Part shown: one piece after another, positions 49,169-59,000 of the stretch
Numbering within the stretch: position 1 is the stretch's first letter
Layout: every line of letters starts with the position of its first letter
NCBI RefSeq assembly: GCF_000143415.4
Contig: NW_003314263.1
Coordinates: 223,114-287,113 of the forward strand
DNA length: 64,000 nucleotides
Direction of reading: 5' to 3'
Source: Selaginella moellendorffii
Taxonomy: Eukaryota; Plantae; Lycopodiophyta
Notes under the pieces: generated by a model
The model's input: the letters and a program-made list of their open reading frames with translations, nothing else
Told to the model about the DNA's origin: nothing
Databases searched by the model: none
Position numbers and translations under genes: made by a program

Positions 49169-50001
49169 ATGGCTCAAAGTCGTCTGGTGCTAGCGACCTG
49201 GATTTGCACTGTTCTTTTGAATGCCTCAAGTAAGCTTCCAGCTCCTACAACTTGGAACTTTCTAAATGCTGAAAGCCGCAGGATCTTTTGGGATAAACTT
49301 TCGTCTATACAATGGATGCCCGTTCACGGTCTGGCCTGGATGGCTCAACAACGGCGATAGCCCGGCTCTTGGAAATGGTGGCACGCAGCTAGAACCTTAC
49401 ACTTTTATAGACTTGGGAACTCCAACATCGGACTGGGGTGGCCGGTTCTGGGGCCGCAGGGGTTGCGACTTTCAAGGTCTGTCCTCAAGATATTTAATTC
49501 TTTGATCTTTGATTTGTGGTTCCTGTAGGCAGCGGATGCAGCACTGGGGATTGTAACAAGCAGCTCTATTGCCAAGGCATAGGAGGAGCTCCCCCCTACA
49601 GCATTGCCGAGTTTAAACTTGGTGGCGCCCCCAACACCGGCTTGGACTTCTACGACGTCTCTCTGGTTGATGGCTATAATCTGCCCATCCGGATCACTCC
49701 CAGTAAGTCCGGCTGCCCCTTCACGGGTTGCCTGAGGGACGTGATTCCGTGGTGCCCGTCCGAGCTCCAAGTTCACGATTATTCCGGAGTCGTGGGCTGC
49801 AAGAGTGCGTGCCTGGCGTTTGGCACGCCACCTTTTTGTTGCACGGGGGACTACTCCACTCCCCAGACCTGCAAACCCTCGTCCTACTCGAAAATTTTCA
49901 AGGACATTTGCCCGCTCGCGTATAGCTACGCTTACGATGACCCAAGCAGCACGTTTACTTGTTCCAATGGTGGTGACTATACGATCACTTTCTGTCCATA
50001 G
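49169..50001 (+). CDS. Thaumatin-like protein (PR-5), 3 exons: 49169-49229, 49282-49476, 49529-50001
   Basis: NGCPFTVWPG, WGGRFWGRRGC, CSTGDC, AEF, DFYDVSLVDGYNLP, CKSACLAF, YSKIFKDICPLAYSYAYDD, YTITFCP. GT-AG introns keep the frame. Confidence 0.96.
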
Positions 50002-50148
50002 AATGTTCCAGTTTTGAGAAAAACCATAAAAAAAAAGAGCGAAACCATACATTTTTATTGGGCTGCTAAAGTAATTAGAGGTTCTGAAGCTAGTAACTCA
50101 TAAATAAATGTGGAACAAAACTCTAAGGCTTTGTAACTGACTGATGAG

Positions 50149-50592
50149 ATGATGAAGATGAATTATCTTGCTTTTCCTATAGTGTTTGTGATTTGCTCTG
50201 TTTTTGTGTTTCCAACTTCAATGGTTGATGCTACTGCTATAACACCTTCTGGTCGTATTGTTGATGGCAAAGTGTATTGCATAGCTAATCCTACTATTCC
50301 ACCTGATATGCTACAGCGGGGTTTAGATTATGCGTGCTCTCAAGTTGATTGTTCTGCGATTCAGTTTGATGGTCCTTGCTCTTATCCTAATAGCATCTAT
50401 TCGCATGCATCGTGGGCATATAACCTTTATTTCCAAATGAAAGCTCGCTATGATTATAATTGCTACTTTGACAACACTGCATTGATCTCTTCCACTGATC
50501 CGAGTAGGATTTATTTTTATTTCTGTAATTATTCTTGTTCAAAAATTGATTACTTTTCAGGCTTTGGGAGTTGCAACTATTTATTTAAATGA
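50149..50592 (+). CDS. Secreted X8 (CBM43) beta-1,3-glucan-binding domain protein
   Basis: Signal peptide; YCIAN...LQRGLDYAC..VDCSAIQ..GPC...HASWAYNLYFQ...CYFDNTA...TDPS. Short intron before GFGSC. Confidence 0.9.
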   Translation: MMKMNYLAFPIVFVICSVFVFPTSMVDATAITPSGRIVDGKVYCIANPTIPPDMLQRGLDYACSQVDCSAIQFDGPCSYPNSIYSHASWAYNLYFQMKARYDYNCYFDNTALISSTDPSRIYFYFCNYSCSKIDYFSGFGSCNYLFK

Positions 50593-50926
50593 AGAAAATT
50601 AATTTTTATGTAATAATTATAATAATTGTAACTTTTAATTTGAATTTTAATACTAATTTGGAATTTAAACGTAATTGTGTGCGAATATTCATGACGCCGT
50701 TGATCATACAAATTGATCCTGACCGTTCGAGTCCGTTGGGCAAAATTAGGGTTCTTCATCTCCCCGAATGCCGTCCAGGAAGAAGAGGCGCCGCCCGTGG
50801 AGCCGGATCGAAAGCGCAGTTGGAGTAATGCAGGTAATCTAGGCAGTTCCTAGCGATCGCTAGCTGCGGCACAGGCCGGAATTGGGCAGGGGTGAAGATA
50901 TGCATACTGTTCTACACAGCAGGGAA

Positions 50927-51958
50927 ATGGATCTTGATTGCCAGCGCGTGGACGCTGCGGCGGCAGCTGCGGCATTGAGCTGGGCGAACGAGGTAGCGCT
51001 CCTCGGCGATAGGGATCAATCAGAAGGATTGGACGATGGCGTGGGACACGACAATATTCTCATGGACCAGCACGCCTCGATGCAAGGCTTTTCTTTGATG
51101 ATGATGGCCGCGGAGAATGGCCAGAGTTTCCATCCCATGATCCTGATGGGCCAGGAATCTACGCCGCCTCCACAGCCGCCGCCGCCTCCTCCACAGCCGC
51201 CGGTTAGAACTCCGTCCACTGTGCTCTCTCTCCAGACCATGCCTCCAAACGAGGAGAATTCTTCCAAGGCCGTGACGAAGAAGAGGGGGAGGCAAAAGGG
51301 CCCCGGGAAGCCAAAGTCACACTACGTCAAGGAGAGGGACTCTTCTTTCCAGCTCGTCTTGAAGCTCCCGCTTAAGTCGCGAAAGCTCTTTTGCGTGGCC
51401 GAGTTTTACAAGTACATGGCGCAGTCCTCCTCGGATTCTCTGTGTAAGGTAAAGTTCTCTCGATCGGTTCTTTAGTCCTTCGGATTTTCGTTTGCTCTTT
51501 GGACACTGCTCTGTGGCCTTTGTTTTGTTTGTCGAGAAGAGCTAATAGCGTCTTTAGTTTGACAGGTAACCGAGGCATACGCAAAGGCTGGTGAATCCGT
51601 CGGCGTGTCTGGAAAAACTGCGAGGAAATGGGTGGAGGACTGGGAGAGGCGAGCCGACGGTACATTCTCGGAGTCACAGCAGGTTTGTAGAGATTGTTTC
51701 TTTTTCATTTGTCATTTGTAAAAAATCCTCCTTTTCATTGATTCACGCAGGGAAAGCACGTCAAAGTCGAGTGGCTGCTACAACCGGAGCACTTGCAAAG
51801 CAAAGCTCGGGCATGGATAGAGCAAAACTGTCCAAAGAAAGGCGAGCCTCCTCGCAAGGACTCCATCATCAAGATGTTTCGCGACTTTTGTAACAACGAT
51901 CTCCTCCTTGACGTCCAGGTGAGAAGAGTTACACACTTCTAAAACCTCATCTCTTTTT

Positions 51959-51999
<41 letters not shown>

Positions 52000-52147
52000 G
52001 GCTGGAGATCTAGCAGCTGACTCCCTCATGGGCATGACTAGCCATAGAAAAATCTCCACCGAGACGGCCAGGTCTTGGCTCCACAGGCTCGGTTTTAACA
52101 ACTTCAAGGACTTTAGAAAATCATCGACCAAGTCTCTATCAACGTGA
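50927..52147 (+). CDS. Four-exon gene encoding a transposase-derived helix-turn-helix protein without a DDE domain
   Basis: Exons 50927-51448, 51566-51682, 51751-51918 and 52001-52147, all phase-0 GT-AG, giving about 317 aa. Pro-rich region, basic KKRGRQKGPGK, then GVSGKTARKWVEDWE...FSESQQGKHVKVEWLL...ISTETARSWLHRLGF. Confidence 0.75.
51964..51996. repeat. (CT)n microsatellite in an intron polypyrimidine tract
   Basis: Direct observation. Confidence 0.9.
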
Positions 52148-52317
52148 AAATGGTGTAAATAGTAGTAAAACTTGTAACCATAGCTTTGAAAAGTTTGCTC
52201 GAATCAATCAAACGAATTCTTATTTTGTCCAATATGTATCTTACAAAACTTCAAGAGTGTCTTTGTAGCACTTATTTCTAGCTCCGGAAAAACAATCGAT
52301 CTATCCGTTTTCTTCGA

Positions 52318-54042
52318 TCATGGAAGTGGAACTATAACTTCCTTGCGGTCAGGGCCATACGCCTGCAAACAAGAAGAAAATTCGCAGCAATCAACTGTGA
52401 AGAAAGCTACAAATCTTCGTCTTACCAATTGCTTCAGTCCCTTGACGTGAACGTGCGTAAACAGCTCGTGAGTTTCGGGCTGACCGCCCTCCTGCAAAAA
52501 TCGTGCCCGAAAGATTTTTAGAATCCAAGGGTTTCACTCGACTTGAGAAGAGAAAGTCCTACCTTGGCTTGATTAACGGCCTCGTCCACTTCTGCCTTGG
52601 CTTGCTTCTCCAAGTTCTGTAAAGACCAAGTTGAGAGAAATCTCTGCCAATAGCGCACACAGCGCACTCACCTTCAAATCGGCTACAGTCACGATCTCTT
52701 TCGCCAAAAGAAGCTTTCTTACTCTTTCAATCGGGTCTCGCTCCTGGCAGTGGCAGCAAATTATTGTTTTAAAAGTGCAGTGTGCAAACGATAATGACTC
52801 CAAGTTACCTGTCTCACGCCGGAAATCTCTTCCCTTGTCCGATATGTACTCCCGGGATCAGACATGGAGTGCCCATGATAACGATAAGTATCCATTTCCA
52901 ACACCTGTAACGTTCCCATCCCCCGTGAGGAGTAAAGCCAAAAGATATAAAAACTAGATAAGCTTACGATGGGGCCTTTTGTCAAAGCGTGCTCCTTTGC
53001 GAATCGGACGCCCTGCTTGACTGCTAAAACGTCCATTCCATCAATCTAAGAGACAACCACCAAAGTAACAGTTGAAAGAAAAAGAAGGAGACGATCATTG
53101 TAGTTTTGGAGCACAACTTGTACCTTAAGACCCGGGACATAATCTCCACGTTTGTAGTATTCTGGAGATTTTGCTGAGCGCCACTCGGCCGTCCCCATTC
53201 CATCTACACGACAAAAATTCCACACAATCAAAACGAGGAAGAACTCGCACAAGTCAGCTCATAACAAAGAGCAAAAGGAAAAACTCACAGTGATTGTTCT
53301 CGCAGACGAAGATCACCGGCAAGTCCCACAGCGCTGATATGTTCATGGCCTCAAAGAGTTGTCCCTGGTTGGCAGCTCCATCCCCATACAAAGCCAGCGA
53401 CACCGCGTTCTGCTTGTTATACTTTTGCGCGAAAGCTAGCCCAGCTCCCAGCGCGGTCTGTGCTCCAACAATCCCGTTCCCTCCATAGAAATTCCCCTCC
53501 TTGTTGTACATATGCATCGATCCACCTTTCCCGAGCGAGCACCCACTTTTTCTCCCCATGAGCTCCGCCATCACCTCCAGCACCGTGCCACCTCGCCCAA
53601 TATGCGTGCAGTGGTCCCTGTAAGCAGTGATGATGGCGTCCTCCTTGGTGAGCGCCGCCTCCATTCCCACGCACACCGCCTCCTGCCCGTCGTAGAGATG
53701 GCAAAACCCGCGAATAAACTTCGCCTTGTAGAGCGAGTCCGCCGCAATCTCCATCCTTCTCATCACATACATCACCTTGAAGAAATCCACGAGCTCCTTG
53801 GCCGAGGTCTCCACGCGCTGCTCCGGCGGATCGCACCGGTGCCCCGCGTACGGCACTGGAATATCGACCACGAAGGGCGTGGTGTCGTCCGGCGCCGCCG
53901 CGAAGCCCCTGGACGAGGACTGGCGACTCAATGCCGACGACGCGAGGCGGAGTAGCGCTTGCGGCGCCGCGGCACTGGAGGACGACGAAGAACACGCCGA
54001 GGAGAGGAGCCGCTGCCGCCATCGCGCCATCGCCATCGCCAT
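52318..54042 (-). CDS. PDHA: Mitochondrial pyruvate dehydrogenase E1 alpha subunit (multi-exon)
   Basis: [53 protein letters not shown], and a transit peptide. Confidence 0.97.
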
Positions 54043-54321: not shown

Positions 54322-55335
54322 TCACGCGACTGGTGGTCTGAGGACGTGATCTTGCGAGGTGTCCACCACCGCCGGCGGCATCCACTGCCACATTGCCATG
54401 CCGGGGAATCCTGGCAATGGCCCCGCGGCGGATGCTCCGCCAGTCTTGGTGGAAGCCGCCTGGATCTGTGCGTGGAAGGCCGCGGCGGCGGCGGCGGCGT
54501 GGTGAGCGTGGAGCGCCGCCGCCGGGTGTGGCATGAAGCTCGGAGGCATCGCCATCGTCTTGAGCTGCTGCTCCAGTCGGTCCTTCTCGGACTTGAGCCT
54601 CATCTTCTCCTCTCTGAGCTCGTTCTTCTCGGCCTGGATGGACGATCGAAGAGGAGAGTTTTTAGAGCTGGGAAGCTTGAGAGAGCTTGGAACTTACCTT
54701 GAGTTCTTTGATCCCGTCCCGGAGCTGCTCGTTTGATTCTTTGAGCTGCTGGGCTTCCGCGCGGAGCTGCGTGATGACACGCACCGCGTCGCTGAGGATC
54801 GTTGCCTTGTCCGACTTTGGAGGCCTTCCGGGCTCCAATGCGGCACTCAGCTCTACAAACCTGTGAAAAAAAGGAAACAAAGTTCGCGAAAGAGCTTTAG
54901 AACTTGGAAGAACAAAGTTGGCAAACCTGTCATTGAGACGGTCCCTTCGCATTTTCTCCCGGCAAGCTTTGTTCCCTGGAGCACCGCACGACTCTTCACG
55001 GGACCTGGAAACAATCTCTCGTAAACCATCAAAGATCTACCAAGGAAAAGTCGCATTGAATCGAGAAGAAGAAAGCTCACCTTTTCTTTGGACATGTCTT
55101 CTCGAATTCATCCGAATCCACTTTGGAGGAGTCATTCTCGACGCTGCAAGAACAGTAGAAAGATTTCCAATCAATCCCAAAGGAAAAAATTAGAAAGCTT
55201 GTTAACTTACCAGCAATCCACTGGATCGCAAGAAGGTTGTGAGCCCCAAAAGAGGGCACTGGAATTCTGTGACTCCTCGTCTAGAAAAGTATCCGACAGA
55301 AAAGCCATCCATTTCTGGCTTTGCGGCGAGGACAT
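54322..55335 (-). CDS. ILR3: bHLH subgroup IVc transcription factor (ILR3/bHLH105-like, iron homeostasis)
   Basis: Start MSSPQSQKWMAFL; KACREKMRRDRLNDRF, ELSAALEPGRPPKSDKATILSDA, leucine zipper, C-terminal MAMWQWMPPAVVDTSQDHVLRPPVA*. Confidence 0.93.
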
Positions 55336-56021: not shown

Positions 56022-59000
56022 CTAGCAGCAGCAGTAGCAACAGTGGCACCGGTTGCACAGGCACTGCCGCTGGTGCTGCTGGAGCTGCTGGTGGAGCTGC
56101 TGTTGATCCGAAAACTGGGCCAAAATCCGGGCGTGAAGAGGGTCACTGCCGCTGCTGCTAGACCAATTCGCTGGAAACTGCATCAAGAACTGCTGCTGCG
56201 GCTGCTGCTGTTGTTCTTGCTGCTGATCTTTCGGGTGTTGGTGCTGCTGCTGCTGGCTTTGCTGCTGCTGAGAGGACTGGCAGAAACCAGCCACGAAAGA
56301 TGGTTTCATCACCTCCCCCTTCCAAAGATCCAGGGGCTCTCTCGTCGCCGCAAGCTGCTGCCAGTCCACCACACCATCCGGCAGCTTCGAGGCCGCCTCA
56401 GGCAAGGCACCTGAGAAGCCCCCGTTTTGATCCAGCCTGTAGATCCCGCCGCCGCTGCTCACGGCGGCCAGACTCCTACATCTCGCGGCAAACTCTCTAT
56501 CCTGGGCTTCTGTGGTAACTTTCACACTCTTAGTCGATCGGCCCCAAGGAATGAAATAGCAGTGGCAACTTACCAGCTGAGCCCGAGCACCAGCTCTCGC
56601 CGAGCAAAAACGGAACGCCCCTAGAAGTCGAGTCACAAGGCTCCGGCTTTGCTGCTGTTGTTGCTGTTAGTGACATTGTTGGTGGATGGGAGAGGAGCGA
56701 CTGTCCAAAGAGCTTCACGTCGCTGCTCCGGCTCAGCGGTGTCTTGGACATCGTCTCGCCCGCTTGGACGCCGGGGGTGGCAATAGTAGCAGTCGGCTCG
56801 GTCGTGATCTCCGAGTTGATGGAGGCGGAGGCGGTGGCGGCGGGGGTGATGGCGGCGGGGGTGGAGCTTCTAGCTTGCACCGTGTTCGAGGCATTCGAGG
56901 GGAAGCTGCCTCCATCTGGGGAAGTTACCGAGGCCAGCTGCTGTGTCGTTGTTGCACTCATCTCTTGAGCCAGCTGATGCTGTTCAACAATCCGGTCAAG
57001 CTTTAGGCGTTTCCGAGCTTTGCTGTAAAATGTCTTGCACTGACCTTCGTTCTTTGAGCGAACGTGCACCGCTATGCTCTTGAAATCCTTCCCGAAGAGT
57101 AACACCGCATCCAGAAACAGCTCCCTCTCCGTATCTGTCCATTCCGACTCCGCCTCCTCAACCTGTTCCCGTCTACTCCGAGAGCTACGCACCCCCTTCT
57201 GCTTGATGGAGTGCTCCTCCCGCAGCAGCGCCCTCTCACACGGACCCCTCAGTGGTGTCAGCGGCGCATCACTGCTCAGGCTGCAAACTCCCGTCACAAT
57301 GCTCGAGACGTTACCCGAGCTCGTCTCCTTCCCTGGCGTAACTTTGGCCACCGCGGACGCTGCGTTGTAATCCCGGAGCCTGCCACTTGCCGCCGGGGTT
57401 GTCGTCGCCAAATAGCTTGCCCGAGAGTGACGCTTCTTCAGCTGCTGCTTCTTACGTAGCTTCTGAAACTCCTCCGTCTTCTGGTTCCGGTAGTAGAACT
57501 CCACACAGTCACCCGTCGTCTTGTGCTGCAGGAACGACGCGATCTTGGCAAAGTTCTTGTAGAACAAAGCAAACTTATCCAAGAAGAGCTTCTTCTCCTC
57601 GGGTGTCCAGGGGTTGATGCTTTTCCTCTCCTGCTCGAACTCAATGGGATCTTCCACCCGCCGGTTTGACTGCACGATATACTGCGCACTCCTCTCCCCT
57701 TGGCACAAAATCATCGATGGCATGCGTTCTGTTTCTCTATACTGACGCACGGGCTCCGAAACCACCCGCAACCACTGTTGATCTGCAGAAGGAAAGCGTT
57801 TGAGCATAATGAAAGAGGGAAAAACAAATCATCTTACCATCTGGAAGTCGCAGTTTTTGAGGCAGCCGCTGAGTAAAACCATTCCTGCCATCAGTAGCAG
57901 CATCACCCTTCCGTGTCCCATATCTGTCCCTCAACAATCTGTACTTGAGAACAAGCGACCGCTCCTTAAATCTCTGAAGATTTTTCTTGTTAAGCATCTT
58001 CTCCAGTATCCGATCTTTATTCAGCCTGTGTAACTCTTCGTTACGTATCCAAACTTCTGTTTCCTGTGGACTGCTGTAAACCTTCCTCCCACGCACAAAT
58101 CCTTGAGGAAGTATGTGCCCAAAATCTTCTAAACATCGGTCAGTAATAACTTCAGGAAGTTCACCTGGTAAATTACCCGATTGAGACTCCGGCTGATCCT
58201 CCGGCTGCTGAGCAGCATCCACCATAACGACATCCGTGTCGGAATTCCTCTCCTCCGGTATTTCCACAGCAGTCTCCGTCTCTTTTGTCGAACATGGTTG
58301 CTTTTCTAGATCAGGTTGAACAGGCTGTGGCGCATCCGTCTGGACCGCAAGACTTGCCAGCTCCTTCTCGATGGACTCTATCTCAAGCTCAACCTGTTCC
58401 ACCTGAAGTAGCACCGCTTCTTTGGACAGCCGAGGCTCTTCCTCCTGCTGCTGGAGGGTCTGTGCGGGCGGATCGTGAGTCTCTTCTGCCTCTCTCGGTT
58501 GCGGTGACAGCGCACACTCTTCATTACCTCTCGCAAAAGGTATAGAAGGAGATCTCGGTGTAGTCAGGGGTATGGAAGGAGACCTCGGTGCTGCCGTCGC
58601 CATGGTCTCACAAGTTAGAATGATGGGATGGTCAGTACCGCACACCACCTTGTCACTGACGCCGCTGGGCGCAGGAGTGGGAGTATGCTCTCTCGACGGC
58701 GTGAGATCTCTGTCCGAAGAAGGCAAACCTGCAAAGCAGAGAAGAAATCACTTATAACGAACACCGAACGAACGAAATATCACTTACTTCCATTCGCGTC
58801 TCCCTTGCTCTCGAAACCCCGTGCGTGTTCCTGCTCAGCGCATCCGTTACTCGTCGCAGGGGCTGGCTCCTCCTCGTGGGACCTGGCTCTGCTGGTGTTC
58901 TTCTGCTCGTATCTCGCAAGACCTTCCCCCCACTTGAGGCGAGTCTTCTTCGGAGGAGACGATGGTGGCAGAGGTACCCTCTCCTCTTGTAGCAGCGAGG

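What the first reader, a model, noticed from the sequence alone, without database searches (positions are those of the whole stretch)
50927..52147. Candidate domesticated transposase: spliced host gene keeping only the DNA-binding module of an IS630/Tc1-type transposase
Seen in sequence: the six-frame track shows only exon 1, but three clean phase-0 GT-AG introns join an intact protein of about 317 aa. It has a Pro/Gln-rich N-terminus and a basic KKRGRQKGPGK patch, then VTEAYAKAGESVGVSGKTARKWVEDWE...FSESQQ|GKHVKVEWLL...KARAWIEQNCPKKGEP...FRDFCNNDLL...ISTETARSWLHRLGF, and stops 16 codons later. From recall: this motif series resembles the N-terminal HTH regions of IS630/Tc1-mariner-related DDE transposases of fungi and invertebrates, where RWLxxLGF is followed by KGxYxDGHER and the catalytic core. 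Here that core is absent. There are no TIRs or TSD, the composition is host-like and undecayed, and the gene sits in a gene island. Inference: an exapted, lineage-specific DNA-binding protein or transcription regulator, possibly from a transposon family not typical of plants.
Basis: partly seen in the sequence, partly recalled or inferred. Interest (0 to 1): 0.8.

Follow-up and report, generated by a model that had tools for sequence, protein, structure and literature searches.

The report
Tamed transposase DNA-binding gene, Selaginella
This is a real, spliced and expressed spikemoss gene that keeps only the two-part DNA-binding head of an IS630/Tc1-type jumping-gene enzyme; clubmosses and peat mosses have conserved the same cut-down gene for hundreds of millions of years, so it is an old tamed transposon gene whose cellular job is still untested.

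Summary
Exons 50927-51448, 51566-51682, 51751-51918 and 52001-52147 join through three phase-0 GT-AG introns into 317 aa. This equals the database protein SELMODRAFT_438228 of Selaginella moellendorffii. An upstream in-frame ATG at 50900 gives 326 aa. Transcript contigs from four studies lack all three introns.

A profile of the conserved core finds dozens of eukaryotic proteins that align collinearly up to the WLHxLGF motif. They then continue with KKGxYxDGHE and a DDE_3-type catalytic domain. The plant protein instead stops 16 residues after LGF, and no catalytic remnant lies anywhere in the 64-kb window.

Orthologues in Diphasiastrum, several Sphagnum species and one unidentified contig end at the same point and share the same three intron positions. 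Non-synonymous change in the core is 0.16-0.22 per site, while synonymous sites are saturated.

The gene is therefore not lycophyte-specific; it predates the split of mosses and vascular plants. Two more divergent truncated homologues of unknown source group with it.

Function (sequence-specific DNA binding, probably gene or chromatin regulation) is inferred only. This scan already reported the identical twin locus 1.88 Mb away (s1-431166) with the same reading.

The parts
50750..50899 (+). 5' UTR (transcript start about 50749-50760), holding a 24-codon upstream ORF at 50768-50842
   Evidence: Left ends of transcript contigs. The uORF was read. A 4-base indel at 50859 appears in two runs.
50900..51448 (+). 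Coding exon 1. ATG at 50900 gives the 326-aa form; ATG at 50927 gives the 317-aa GenBank form. It encodes a variable low-complexity N-terminus and the start of the conserved core.
   Evidence: The N-terminus is poorly conserved and the core is conserved from LKLPLK onward.
51278..51316 (+). Basic Gly-rich patch KKRGRQKGPGKPK (residues 118-130), a likely nuclear-localisation or minor-groove patch
   Evidence: Sequence. It is basic and Gly-rich in all orthologues, but the letters are not conserved in Sphagnum. It has no canonical GRP AT-hook core. Function is inferred.
51371..51652 (+). First helix-turn-helix subdomain (residues 149-203), split by intron 1. Recognition helix is around KTARKWVEDW.
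   Evidence: AF2 helices at 149-165, 175-186 and 190-203 with pLDDT above 90. Sub-threshold Pfam HTH_23. Best structural match is transposase HTH protein TnpE 2rn7: Z 7.0, rmsd 1.8 over 53 residues.
51449..51565 (+). Intron 1 (117 nt, GT-AG, phase 0)
   Evidence: The same position occurs in Sphagnum and in L001.
51566..51682 (+). Coding exon 2 (39 codons)
   Evidence: It is 117 nt in Selaginella, Sphagnum and L001.
51683..51750 (+). Intron 2 (68 nt, GT-AG, phase 0), just before the conserved GKH linker motif
51751..51918 (+). Coding exon 3 (56 codons): GKH linker and the first two helices of the second HTH
   Evidence: It is 168 nt in all three plant loci. The G of GKH is nearly invariant across transposase relatives.
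51919..52000 (+). Intron 3 (82 nt, GT-AG, phase 0) containing a (CT)n run at about 51958-51997
   Evidence: Removal is shown by record arithmetic.
51787..52096 (+). Second helix-turn-helix subdomain (residues 226-301), split by intron 3, ending in ETARSWLHRLGF
   Evidence: AF2 helices at 226-239, 252-279 and 289-298. This stretch aligns to the part of the long relatives that hits Pfam HTH_33.
52001..52147 (+). Coding exon 4 with the conserved tail NFKDFR (52100-52117) and the stop codon at 52145-52147
   Evidence: Relatives carry KKGxYxDGHE and the DDE domain where this protein stops.
52148..52299 (+). 3' UTR, overlapping the 3' end of the convergent minus-strand neighbour by about 87 nt (52213-52299)
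   Evidence: Contig ends, table 8.

Best explanation
This is a host gene that arose by domestication of an IS630/Tc1-mariner-group (Pfam DDE_3-type) transposase. Only the N-terminal two-part helix-turn-helix DNA-binding module was kept, and the DDE nuclease was lost. The following points are shown. The gene is spliced and transcribed. It is homologous, residue for residue, to the HTH head of DDE-bearing transposases. It ends where their catalytic part begins. The same truncated gene with the same three introns exists in clubmosses and peat mosses under strong purifying selection. The following points are inferred. The protein enters the nucleus through its basic patch. It binds a specific DNA sequence with two HTH subdomains joined by the conserved GKH linker, as paired-like transposase heads do. 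Its variable, low-complexity N-terminus acts as a regulatory or recruiting region. Under this reading it works as a transcription or chromatin factor and cannot cut DNA.
For: The gene model and splicing are confirmed. A profile of the conserved core gave 119 hits at E<=1e-3 in 1.84 billion representatives. At least 50 of these continue after WLHxLGF with KKGxYxDGHE. Long relatives of 795-923 aa carry DES, FDxSxxH and HxELNPIE motifs. Pfam DDE_3 matches 7 of 20 long relatives, best E 4.4e-7, and no other DDE family matches. Two more relatives carry a precomputed PF13358 annotation. The best PDB hit of their profile is the Sleeping Beauty catalytic domain at the NPIE motif, E 0.019. The homologous N-terminal segments hit HTH_23 (13 members), HTH_29 (7), HTH_28 (7), HTH_33 (3) and HTH_32 (2). 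ESM Atlas neighbours by shape are all transposase HTH modules, including HTH_Tnp_IS630 and DDE_3 clusters. Orthologues: Diphasiastrum is 80% identical and Sphagnum 62-63% identical over residues 113-317. All of them stop 10-30 residues after LGF. The three intron positions are shared. In the core, pN is 0.155-0.22 while pS is 0.76-0.89, which is saturated. The truncated proteins form one clade, with SH-aLRT 95 for the five plant rows and 97 when L004 and L005 are added. There are no TIRs and no DDE remnant in 64 kb.
Against: Every Pfam hit (HTH_23 on this protein, DDE_3 and the HTH families on relatives) lies below the curated gathering score. Matches to solved structures are middling: Z is at most 7.0 and Foldseek E is at least 0.1, so the fold alone is not diagnostic. 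No DNA binding, localisation or phenotype data exist. The tree is unrooted, so the direction of descent (transposase to host gene) rests on taxonomic breadth and on the bacterial IS630 architecture, not on the tree. The gene was not found among annotated proteins of seed plants, ferns, Physcomitrium or Marchantia, so whatever it does is dispensable in most land plants.
Confidence: 0.8

Rival explanations
1. The gene is a host-retained transposition inhibitor. A DNA-binding-only transposase fragment would compete with, or poison, active transposases of the parent family at their terminal repeats. Known truncated-transposase repressors work this way. This would be a genome-defence role rather than gene regulation.
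For: The architecture (HTH head without nuclease) is what such repressors have. The gene is expressed at moderate depth in every run laid.
Against: The core stays 61-80% identical across lycophytes and Sphagnum, which is hard to maintain against a transposon family that would itself evolve or die out. No DDE-bearing relative was seen in this window. No plant DDE-bearing relative was identified among the named hits.
Confidence: 0.08
2. The gene is a decaying or non-autonomous transposon fragment, or an annotation artefact, rather than a functional host gene.
For: UniRef labels the Sphagnum proteins 'Transposase'. Two loci in the Selaginella assembly encode the same protein.
Against: The reading frames are intact. 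The same stop region and the same three introns occur in taxa separated since the moss/vascular-plant split. Non-synonymous change is low against saturated synonymous change. Transcripts are spliced in four studies. There are no TIRs. The Sphagnum loci are syntenic between species.
Confidence: 0.03
3. The HTH module has been repurposed and no longer binds specific DNA. It might instead act as a protein-protein or RNA-binding scaffold in a complex.
For: No binding data exist. The structural matches are to generic three-helix bundles, and some of these are not DNA binders. The strictly conserved C-terminal tail NFKD(F/Y)R has no counterpart in transposases.
Against: Both predicted recognition helices and the GKH linker, which are the parts conserved in the transposases, are the most conserved parts here too.
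Confidence: 0.07
4. The direction is reversed or the descent is independent. An old host HTH gene was captured by the transposases, or the plant clade and the transposase heads share only a remote common HTH ancestor.
For: The tree is unrooted.
Against: Similarity is collinear over about 165 residues through both HTHs and the linker, at E down to 1e-11 for DDE-bearing proteins. The HTH plus HTH_33 plus DDE_3 layout is also that of bacterial and archaeal IS630-type clusters. The truncated forms are a single narrow clade, whereas the DDE-bearing forms are broad.
Confidence: 0.02

Closest known systems
This may be the Zator superfamily, a guess from memory that was not tested.
   Same: The N-terminal module is collinear: a helical lead-in, HTH1, the S-x-x-G-K-H linker, then HTH2 ending in TARxWLHxLGF.
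   Different: The plant protein stops 16 residues after LGF. It lacks the D, D and E motifs. It has introns, a low-complexity N-terminus and a conserved NFKDFR tail. It has no TIRs.
Vertebrate genes domesticated from pogo transposases of the same ITm group (CENPB, JRK, POGZ and others; PMC7386202)
   Same: They are host genes built on the HTH DNA-binding head of an ITm-group transposase. CENP-B's second HTH appears among the weak fold matches (1hlv, Z 3.9).
   Different: They come from a different superfamily (pogo rather than DDE_3-type) and a different kingdom. Several pogo-derived genes keep a dead catalytic domain, whereas here it is wholly gone.
SETMAR / mariner paired-like DNA-binding domain (PDB 7s03, 3hos)
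   Same: It has a two-HTH head joined by a linker that reads transposon ends. There are weak two-domain structural matches: 3hos Z 4.2 over 106 residues and 7s03.
   Different: SETMAR is a recent primate fusion that keeps the catalytic domain. Sequence similarity to this protein was not detectable.
Known plant domesticated transposases: FHY3/FAR1 and MUSTANG (Mutator-like), DAYSLEEPER (hAT), ALP1/HDP1 with HDP2/ALP2 (PIF/Harbinger). Listed from my own knowledge.
   Same: They are transposase-derived plant nuclear factors conserved as host genes.
   Different: They derive from other superfamilies and are found in seed plants. I found no paper describing an IS630/Tc1/DDE_3-type example in plants.
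Twin locus SELMODRAFT_438090 (scan finding s1-431166), 1.88 Mb further along the same scaffold
   Same: It encodes the identical protein, and the earlier agent reached the same reading.
   Different: It is a separate stretch of DNA. Whether it is the second haplotype or a recent duplicate was not resolved.

Membership tests
IS630/Tc1-mariner-group transposase (Pfam DDE_3) | N-terminal bipartite HTH DNA-binding region (HTH_23/28/29 plus HTH_33-type) | tested here: met
   The core aligns collinearly to transposase heads. HTH_23 hits exon 2 at E 0.0066, below the gathering score. The homologous segments of relatives hit HTH_23, HTH_29, HTH_28, HTH_33 and HTH_32. AF2 gives two three-helix units.
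IS630/Tc1-mariner-group transposase (Pfam DDE_3) | DDE/D catalytic domain | tested here: not met
   The protein ends 16 residues after LGF. No DGHE or DDE motifs are present. tblastn of eleven queries, P0001 plus ten relatives including the long transposases, hits only the HTH exons anywhere in the window. The gene is therefore not a transposase, only derived from one.
IS630/Tc1-mariner-group transposase (Pfam DDE_3) | Terminal inverted repeats and target-site duplication flanking the gene | tested here: not met
   The repeat finder on 49500-53500 gives only 16-33-nt chance-level pairs, none bracketing the gene.
Domesticated (exapted) transposase gene | Significant homology to a transposase, with loss of the parts needed for mobility | tested here: met
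Domesticated (exapted) transposase gene | Orthologues in distantly related species with conserved gene structure | tested here: met
   Orthologues occur in Diphasiastrum, at least eight Sphagnum species and the unidentified L001 contig. The three intron positions and two exon lengths are identical. Synteny holds among Sphagnum species. No shared neighbours are seen between Selaginella and Sphagnum.
Domesticated (exapted) transposase gene | Purifying selection (dN/dS below 1) | tested here: met
   NG86 on the core gives pN 0.155-0.22 against pS 0.76-0.89, which is saturated. Selaginella against L001 over the whole gene gives omega of about 0.11. Within Sphagnum, core omega is 0.19-0.42, but this rests on only 1-3 changes per class.
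Domesticated (exapted) transposase gene | Transcription as a normal spliced mRNA | tested here: met
   Spliced contigs appear in four runs of four studies.
Domesticated (exapted) transposase gene | Low copy number | tested here: inconclusive
   There is one copy in the window and two loci encoding the identical protein on one 4.46-Mb scaffold.
Zator superfamily (ITm group) | Clustering of the DDE-bearing relatives with reference Zator transposases | not testable with these tools
   No Repbase or Dfam reference sequences were on hand. The papers read say only that Zator belongs to the ITm group and is commonest in fungi.
AT-hook proteins | R-G-R-P core in a basic context | tested here: not met
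   The patch reads KKRGRQKGPGKP, with Q where the core has P. It is not conserved letter for letter in Sphagnum or L001.
Sequence-specific DNA-binding transcription factor | Demonstrated DNA binding, nuclear localisation and target genes | not testable with these tools
   This is inference from the fold and from homology only.

The most novel reading that the evidence does not exclude
This may be the founding member of an unrecognised, ancient streptophyte family of paired-like (two-HTH) transcription factors. It would have been born from a DDE_3-type transposase before mosses and vascular plants split. If the divergent truncated homologues L004 and L005 come from algae, the origin would be earlier still. 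The family would then have been kept in lycophytes and Sphagnum and lost from most other land plants. That would be a plant parallel to the proposed transposase origin of the animal paired domain.
Probability: 0.3. Interest if true: 0.65.

Novelty: new member of a known kind. Interest (0 to 1): 0.5.

Why it matters
Domesticated transposases have supplied plants with important regulators, all from Mutator, hAT or Harbinger elements. This gene would add the IS630/Tc1-mariner group to that list. It would also give a case where only the DNA-binding head survived, conserved since the moss/vascular-plant split yet retained in only a few lineages. It offers a defined, small, foldable module (about 165 residues) for asking what DNA such a tamed head recognises once its transposon is gone. 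It also corrects database labels: 'hypothetical protein' in Selaginella and 'Transposase' in Sphagnum.

Tried and rejected
**Searches and structure comparisons that gave nothing decisive**
- Pfam on single exons and on the whole protein gave only sub-threshold hits: HTH_23, plus a DNA polymerase lambda fingers match that I treat as chance.
- A sequence profile of the core against the PDB found nothing.
- Foldseek of the 208-residue model against the PDB gave no match at E below 0.1, although transposase heads topped the list.
- VIA-align gave Z of at most 7.0 for HTH1. It gave Z of at most 5.2 for an HTH2-only model of low confidence (pLDDT 65). Both are within the range called common for helical models, so I count structure as consistent but not diagnostic.
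- The last word search, using the long-transposase alignment, returned only unnamed metagenome proteins.

**Things I could not establish**
- I could not name the source organisms of L001, L004 and L005, or of the long transposases. Cluster look-ups gave no taxa.
- The literature searches found no paper on this gene or family.
- I could not test whether the parent family is Zator.

**Handling of the spliced model**
- I did not submit a hand-joined spliced model to any search tool. Exons were searched by reference.
- After that, the identical database protein P0001 was used by its id.
- Exons were joined only inside local scripts, for codon counts and the tree.

**Steps not taken**
- No complex-prediction job was sent, because I claim no binding partner.

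Full report
**1. The observation**

Exon 1 (50927-51448, 174 codons), exon 2 (51566-51682, 39), exon 3 (51751-51918, 56) and exon 4 (52001-52147, 48 plus stop) translate to the quoted peptides. The three introns begin with GT and end with AG in phase 0.

A word search with the mechanical ORF that covers exon 1 returned a 317-aa GenBank protein, SELMODRAFT_438228 of Selaginella moellendorffii (P0001). It matches at 100% identity. A script confirmed that the joined exons equal P0001.

I never sent a hand-joined model to a search tool. Exons were searched by reference, and afterwards the identical database protein was used by id.

An in-frame ATG at 50900 adds nine residues. This corresponds to the 326-aa RefSeq form P0185, which is otherwise identical.

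**2. Expression and splicing**

Twenty public runs hold the stretch. The best runs hold 0.7-0.77 of its sampled words, which is what a transcript without introns and flanks would hold.

Contigs of four runs from four studies lie on the locus from about 50750 to 52299. Introns 1 and 2 are removed at GT..AG joints.

Intron 3 is also removed. In each contig, 6 record letters bridge 88 genomic letters, so exactly 82 are missing. The tool masked the (CT)n run 51948-52007 and therefore did not tabulate that joint.

Contigs that lack all three introns must derive from mRNA. The 3' end overlaps the 3' end of the convergent neighbour.

**3. What it is related to**

Pfam leaves the protein open. The only family hit is a sub-threshold HTH_23 at residues 179-206.

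Word searches found orthologues only in Diphasiastrum complanatum and in Sphagnum.
- Diphasiastrum (344 aa) is 64% identical overall and 80% over residues 113-317.
- Sphagnum (388-398 aa) is 62-63% identical over that part.

In the four-way alignment the stretch from LKLPLK to NFKD(F/Y)R is nearly invariant. All four proteins stop 10-30 residues after RLGF.

A profile of this core (A2) was scored against 1.84 billion representatives and gave 119 proteins at E<=1e-3. Apart from exon-sized pieces of plant orthologues, these are proteins that align collinearly through both helix-turn-helix units. At least 50 of them run straight on after TARxWLHxLGF into xxxxKKGxYxDGHE(R)xDVV.

The long relatives (795-923 aa) carry a DES motif, an FDxSxxH motif about 100-125 residues later, and HxELNPIE about 115-125 residues after that.

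Evidence that the catalytic part is DDE_3-type:
- Pfam DDE_3 is the only catalytic family that hits them: 7 of 20, best E 4.4e-7, all just under the 28.6-bit cut-off.
- Two further relatives have PF13358 precomputed.
- A profile of the long proteins finds the Sleeping Beauty catalytic domain as its best solved-structure match, aligned at the NPIE motif (E 0.019).

Evidence on the heads:
- The homologous head segments hit HTH_23, HTH_29, HTH_28, HTH_33 and HTH_32.
- In P0054, HTH_33 covers the stretch that ends in LGF.
- ESM Atlas neighbours by features are eukaryotic clusters from Basidiomycota, Rotifera and Mucoromycota, followed by bacterial and archaeal IS630-type heads.
- By shape, all ten family sets listed are transposase heads, including HTH_Tnp_IS630 and 'Tc1-like transposase DDE domain' clusters, at TM 0.30-0.51.

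The parent is therefore a eukaryotic lineage of the IS630/Tc1-mariner group. Whether it is the Zator superfamily could not be tested. Zator is described as an ITm member commonest in fungi (PMC7386202; bioRxiv 10.1101/2021.09.26.461848).

**4. The catalytic part is gone, and this is old**

The protein stops 16 residues after LGF. tblastn of eleven queries (P0001 and ten transposase relatives) against the whole 64-kb window hits only the HTH exons. The convergent neighbour starts about 150 nt after the stop. No inverted repeats bracket the gene.

The Sphagnum genes (L003, L006, L007) and an unidentified 7.6-kb contig (L001, run SRR33208241) have introns at the same three codon boundaries: CK|V, Q|GKH and VQ|. 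Exons 2 and 3 are 117 and 168 nt in all of them. Sphagnum has one extra intron in the variable N-terminus. The L001 model (345 aa) also stops 14 residues after NFKDFR.

Nei-Gojobori counts on the core:

| Comparison | pN | pS |
|---|---|---|
| Selaginella vs L001 | 0.155 | 0.76 |
| Selaginella vs Sphagnum | 0.20 | 0.89 |

Synonymous sites are saturated while replacement sites are strongly held. The N-terminus is much freer, with pN 0.52-0.58. Within Sphagnum, core omega is 0.19-0.42, but on only 1-3 changes per class.

A quick maximum-likelihood tree of 52 head segments puts the five plant proteins on one side of a branch (SH-aLRT 95). Two more divergent truncated homologues join them at 97. 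These are L004 from SRR23617307 and L005 from a JGI metagenome. Both lack DGHE and any DDE remnant within 6 kb, and both have different intron positions.

The simplest history is one domestication before the moss/vascular-plant split. 'Lineage-specific' is therefore wrong. 'Retained in few lineages' fits, because the word search over annotated proteins found no orthologue outside Selaginella, Diphasiastrum and Sphagnum. That search covers only proteins of 174-555 aa in that collection.

**5. Structure and likely mechanism**

AlphaFold2 with a 49-sequence alignment gives a confident model of residues 110-317: mean pLDDT 84, with 120 residues at 90 or above.
- A lead-in helix spans residues 131-145.
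- A three-helix unit spans 149-165, 175-186 and 190-203.
- A less ordered linker carries the nearly invariant GKH.
- A second three-helix unit spans 226-239, 252-279 and 289-298.

Matches to solved structures are weak.
- The best match is the transposase HTH protein TnpE (2rn7): Z 7.0, rmsd 1.8 A over 53 residues.
- Two-domain matches to TnsB, MuA, IstA and Mos1 give Z 4.2-5.3.
- Foldseek E values are all 0.1 or above.
- An HTH2-only model was of low confidence and matched generic DNA-binding three-helix domains.

I take the fold as consistent with, but not proof of, a paired-like DNA-binding head.

The mechanism I commit to is inferred, not shown. Nuclear import uses the basic patch at residues 118-130. 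Two HTH units and the linker recognise a bipartite DNA site. The variable N-terminus supplies regulatory output. The protein cannot cut DNA.

**6. Copy number and earlier scan work**

The Selaginella assembly has two loci on the same 4.46-Mb scaffold that encode the identical protein. This scan already reported the other one, 1.88 Mb beyond this window (s1-431166), with the same reading. I reached my reading before seeing that note, and I do not count it as independent evidence. Whether the pair are haplotypes or a recent duplicate is open.

**7. Verdict**

The kind of thing (a host gene made from a transposase DNA-binding head) is well known. This family, its parent lineage and its plant distribution appear undescribed. 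I rate it a new member of a known kind, with interest 0.5.

Noticed in passing
window 50768-50842: A 24-codon upstream ORF (it begins MPSRKKRRRPW) lies inside the 5' UTR of the transcript, ahead of both candidate start codons. It might modulate translation.
   Followed up: no
window 52213-52299: The 3' ends of this gene and of the convergent minus-strand neighbour overlap by about 87 nt. In two runs the assembler fused both transcripts into one 2477-nt contig. The neighbour is a pyruvate dehydrogenase E1-alpha-like gene, about 52301-54042, judged from ORF translations only.
   Followed up: partly
window 50859, 51358, 52117, 52137: Transcript contigs of other studies differ from the window by a 4-base deletion in the 5' UTR and by three single-base changes. 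These are probably the twin locus, the other haplotype or strain variation.
   Followed up: no
window 49516-50592: Two small secreted-protein-like genes lie upstream on the + strand. One is a thaumatin-like Cys-rich ORF (49516-50001) and the other an X8/CBM43-like ORF (50149-50592). Both are named from the look of the translations only.
   Followed up: no
window 54322-54952 and 56530-58726, minus strand: Exons of a bHLH-like gene and a large SANT/Myb-like co-repressor-like gene lie downstream, which confirms a gene-dense setting. Neither was analysed.
   Followed up: no
L004:5228-6917 and L005:5005-7223: There is a second, more divergent group of DDE-less homologues (50-58% identical in the best exon). 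Exons 2 and 3 are fused and an intron sits elsewhere. They come from an SRA run and a JGI metagenome of unknown organisms. They could be algal orthologues or an ancient paralogue.
   Followed up: partly
ESM Atlas clusters seen: Many DDE_3 transposase clusters of arthropods, nematodes and rotifers also carry Pfam PF27940 'C21orf140-like'. This hints that the human gene C21orf140 may itself be related to this kind of transposase. No paper links the two.
   Followed up: no
P0014 (249 aa, on a 2.39-Mb ENA contig): A protein of another, unnamed eukaryote ends a few residues after LGF, while its close relatives P0029 and P0055 run on past LGF (P0029 into DGHE; in P0055 the motif reads AGHE). It is either an independent truncation or a broken copy.
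   Followed up: no
L003, L007 (Sphagnum troendelagicum): This species has two copies on different chromosomes with the same neighbours (a RecA_N gene upstream, a PP2/kinase gene downstream). That would fit homeologues of a polyploid.
   Followed up: partly
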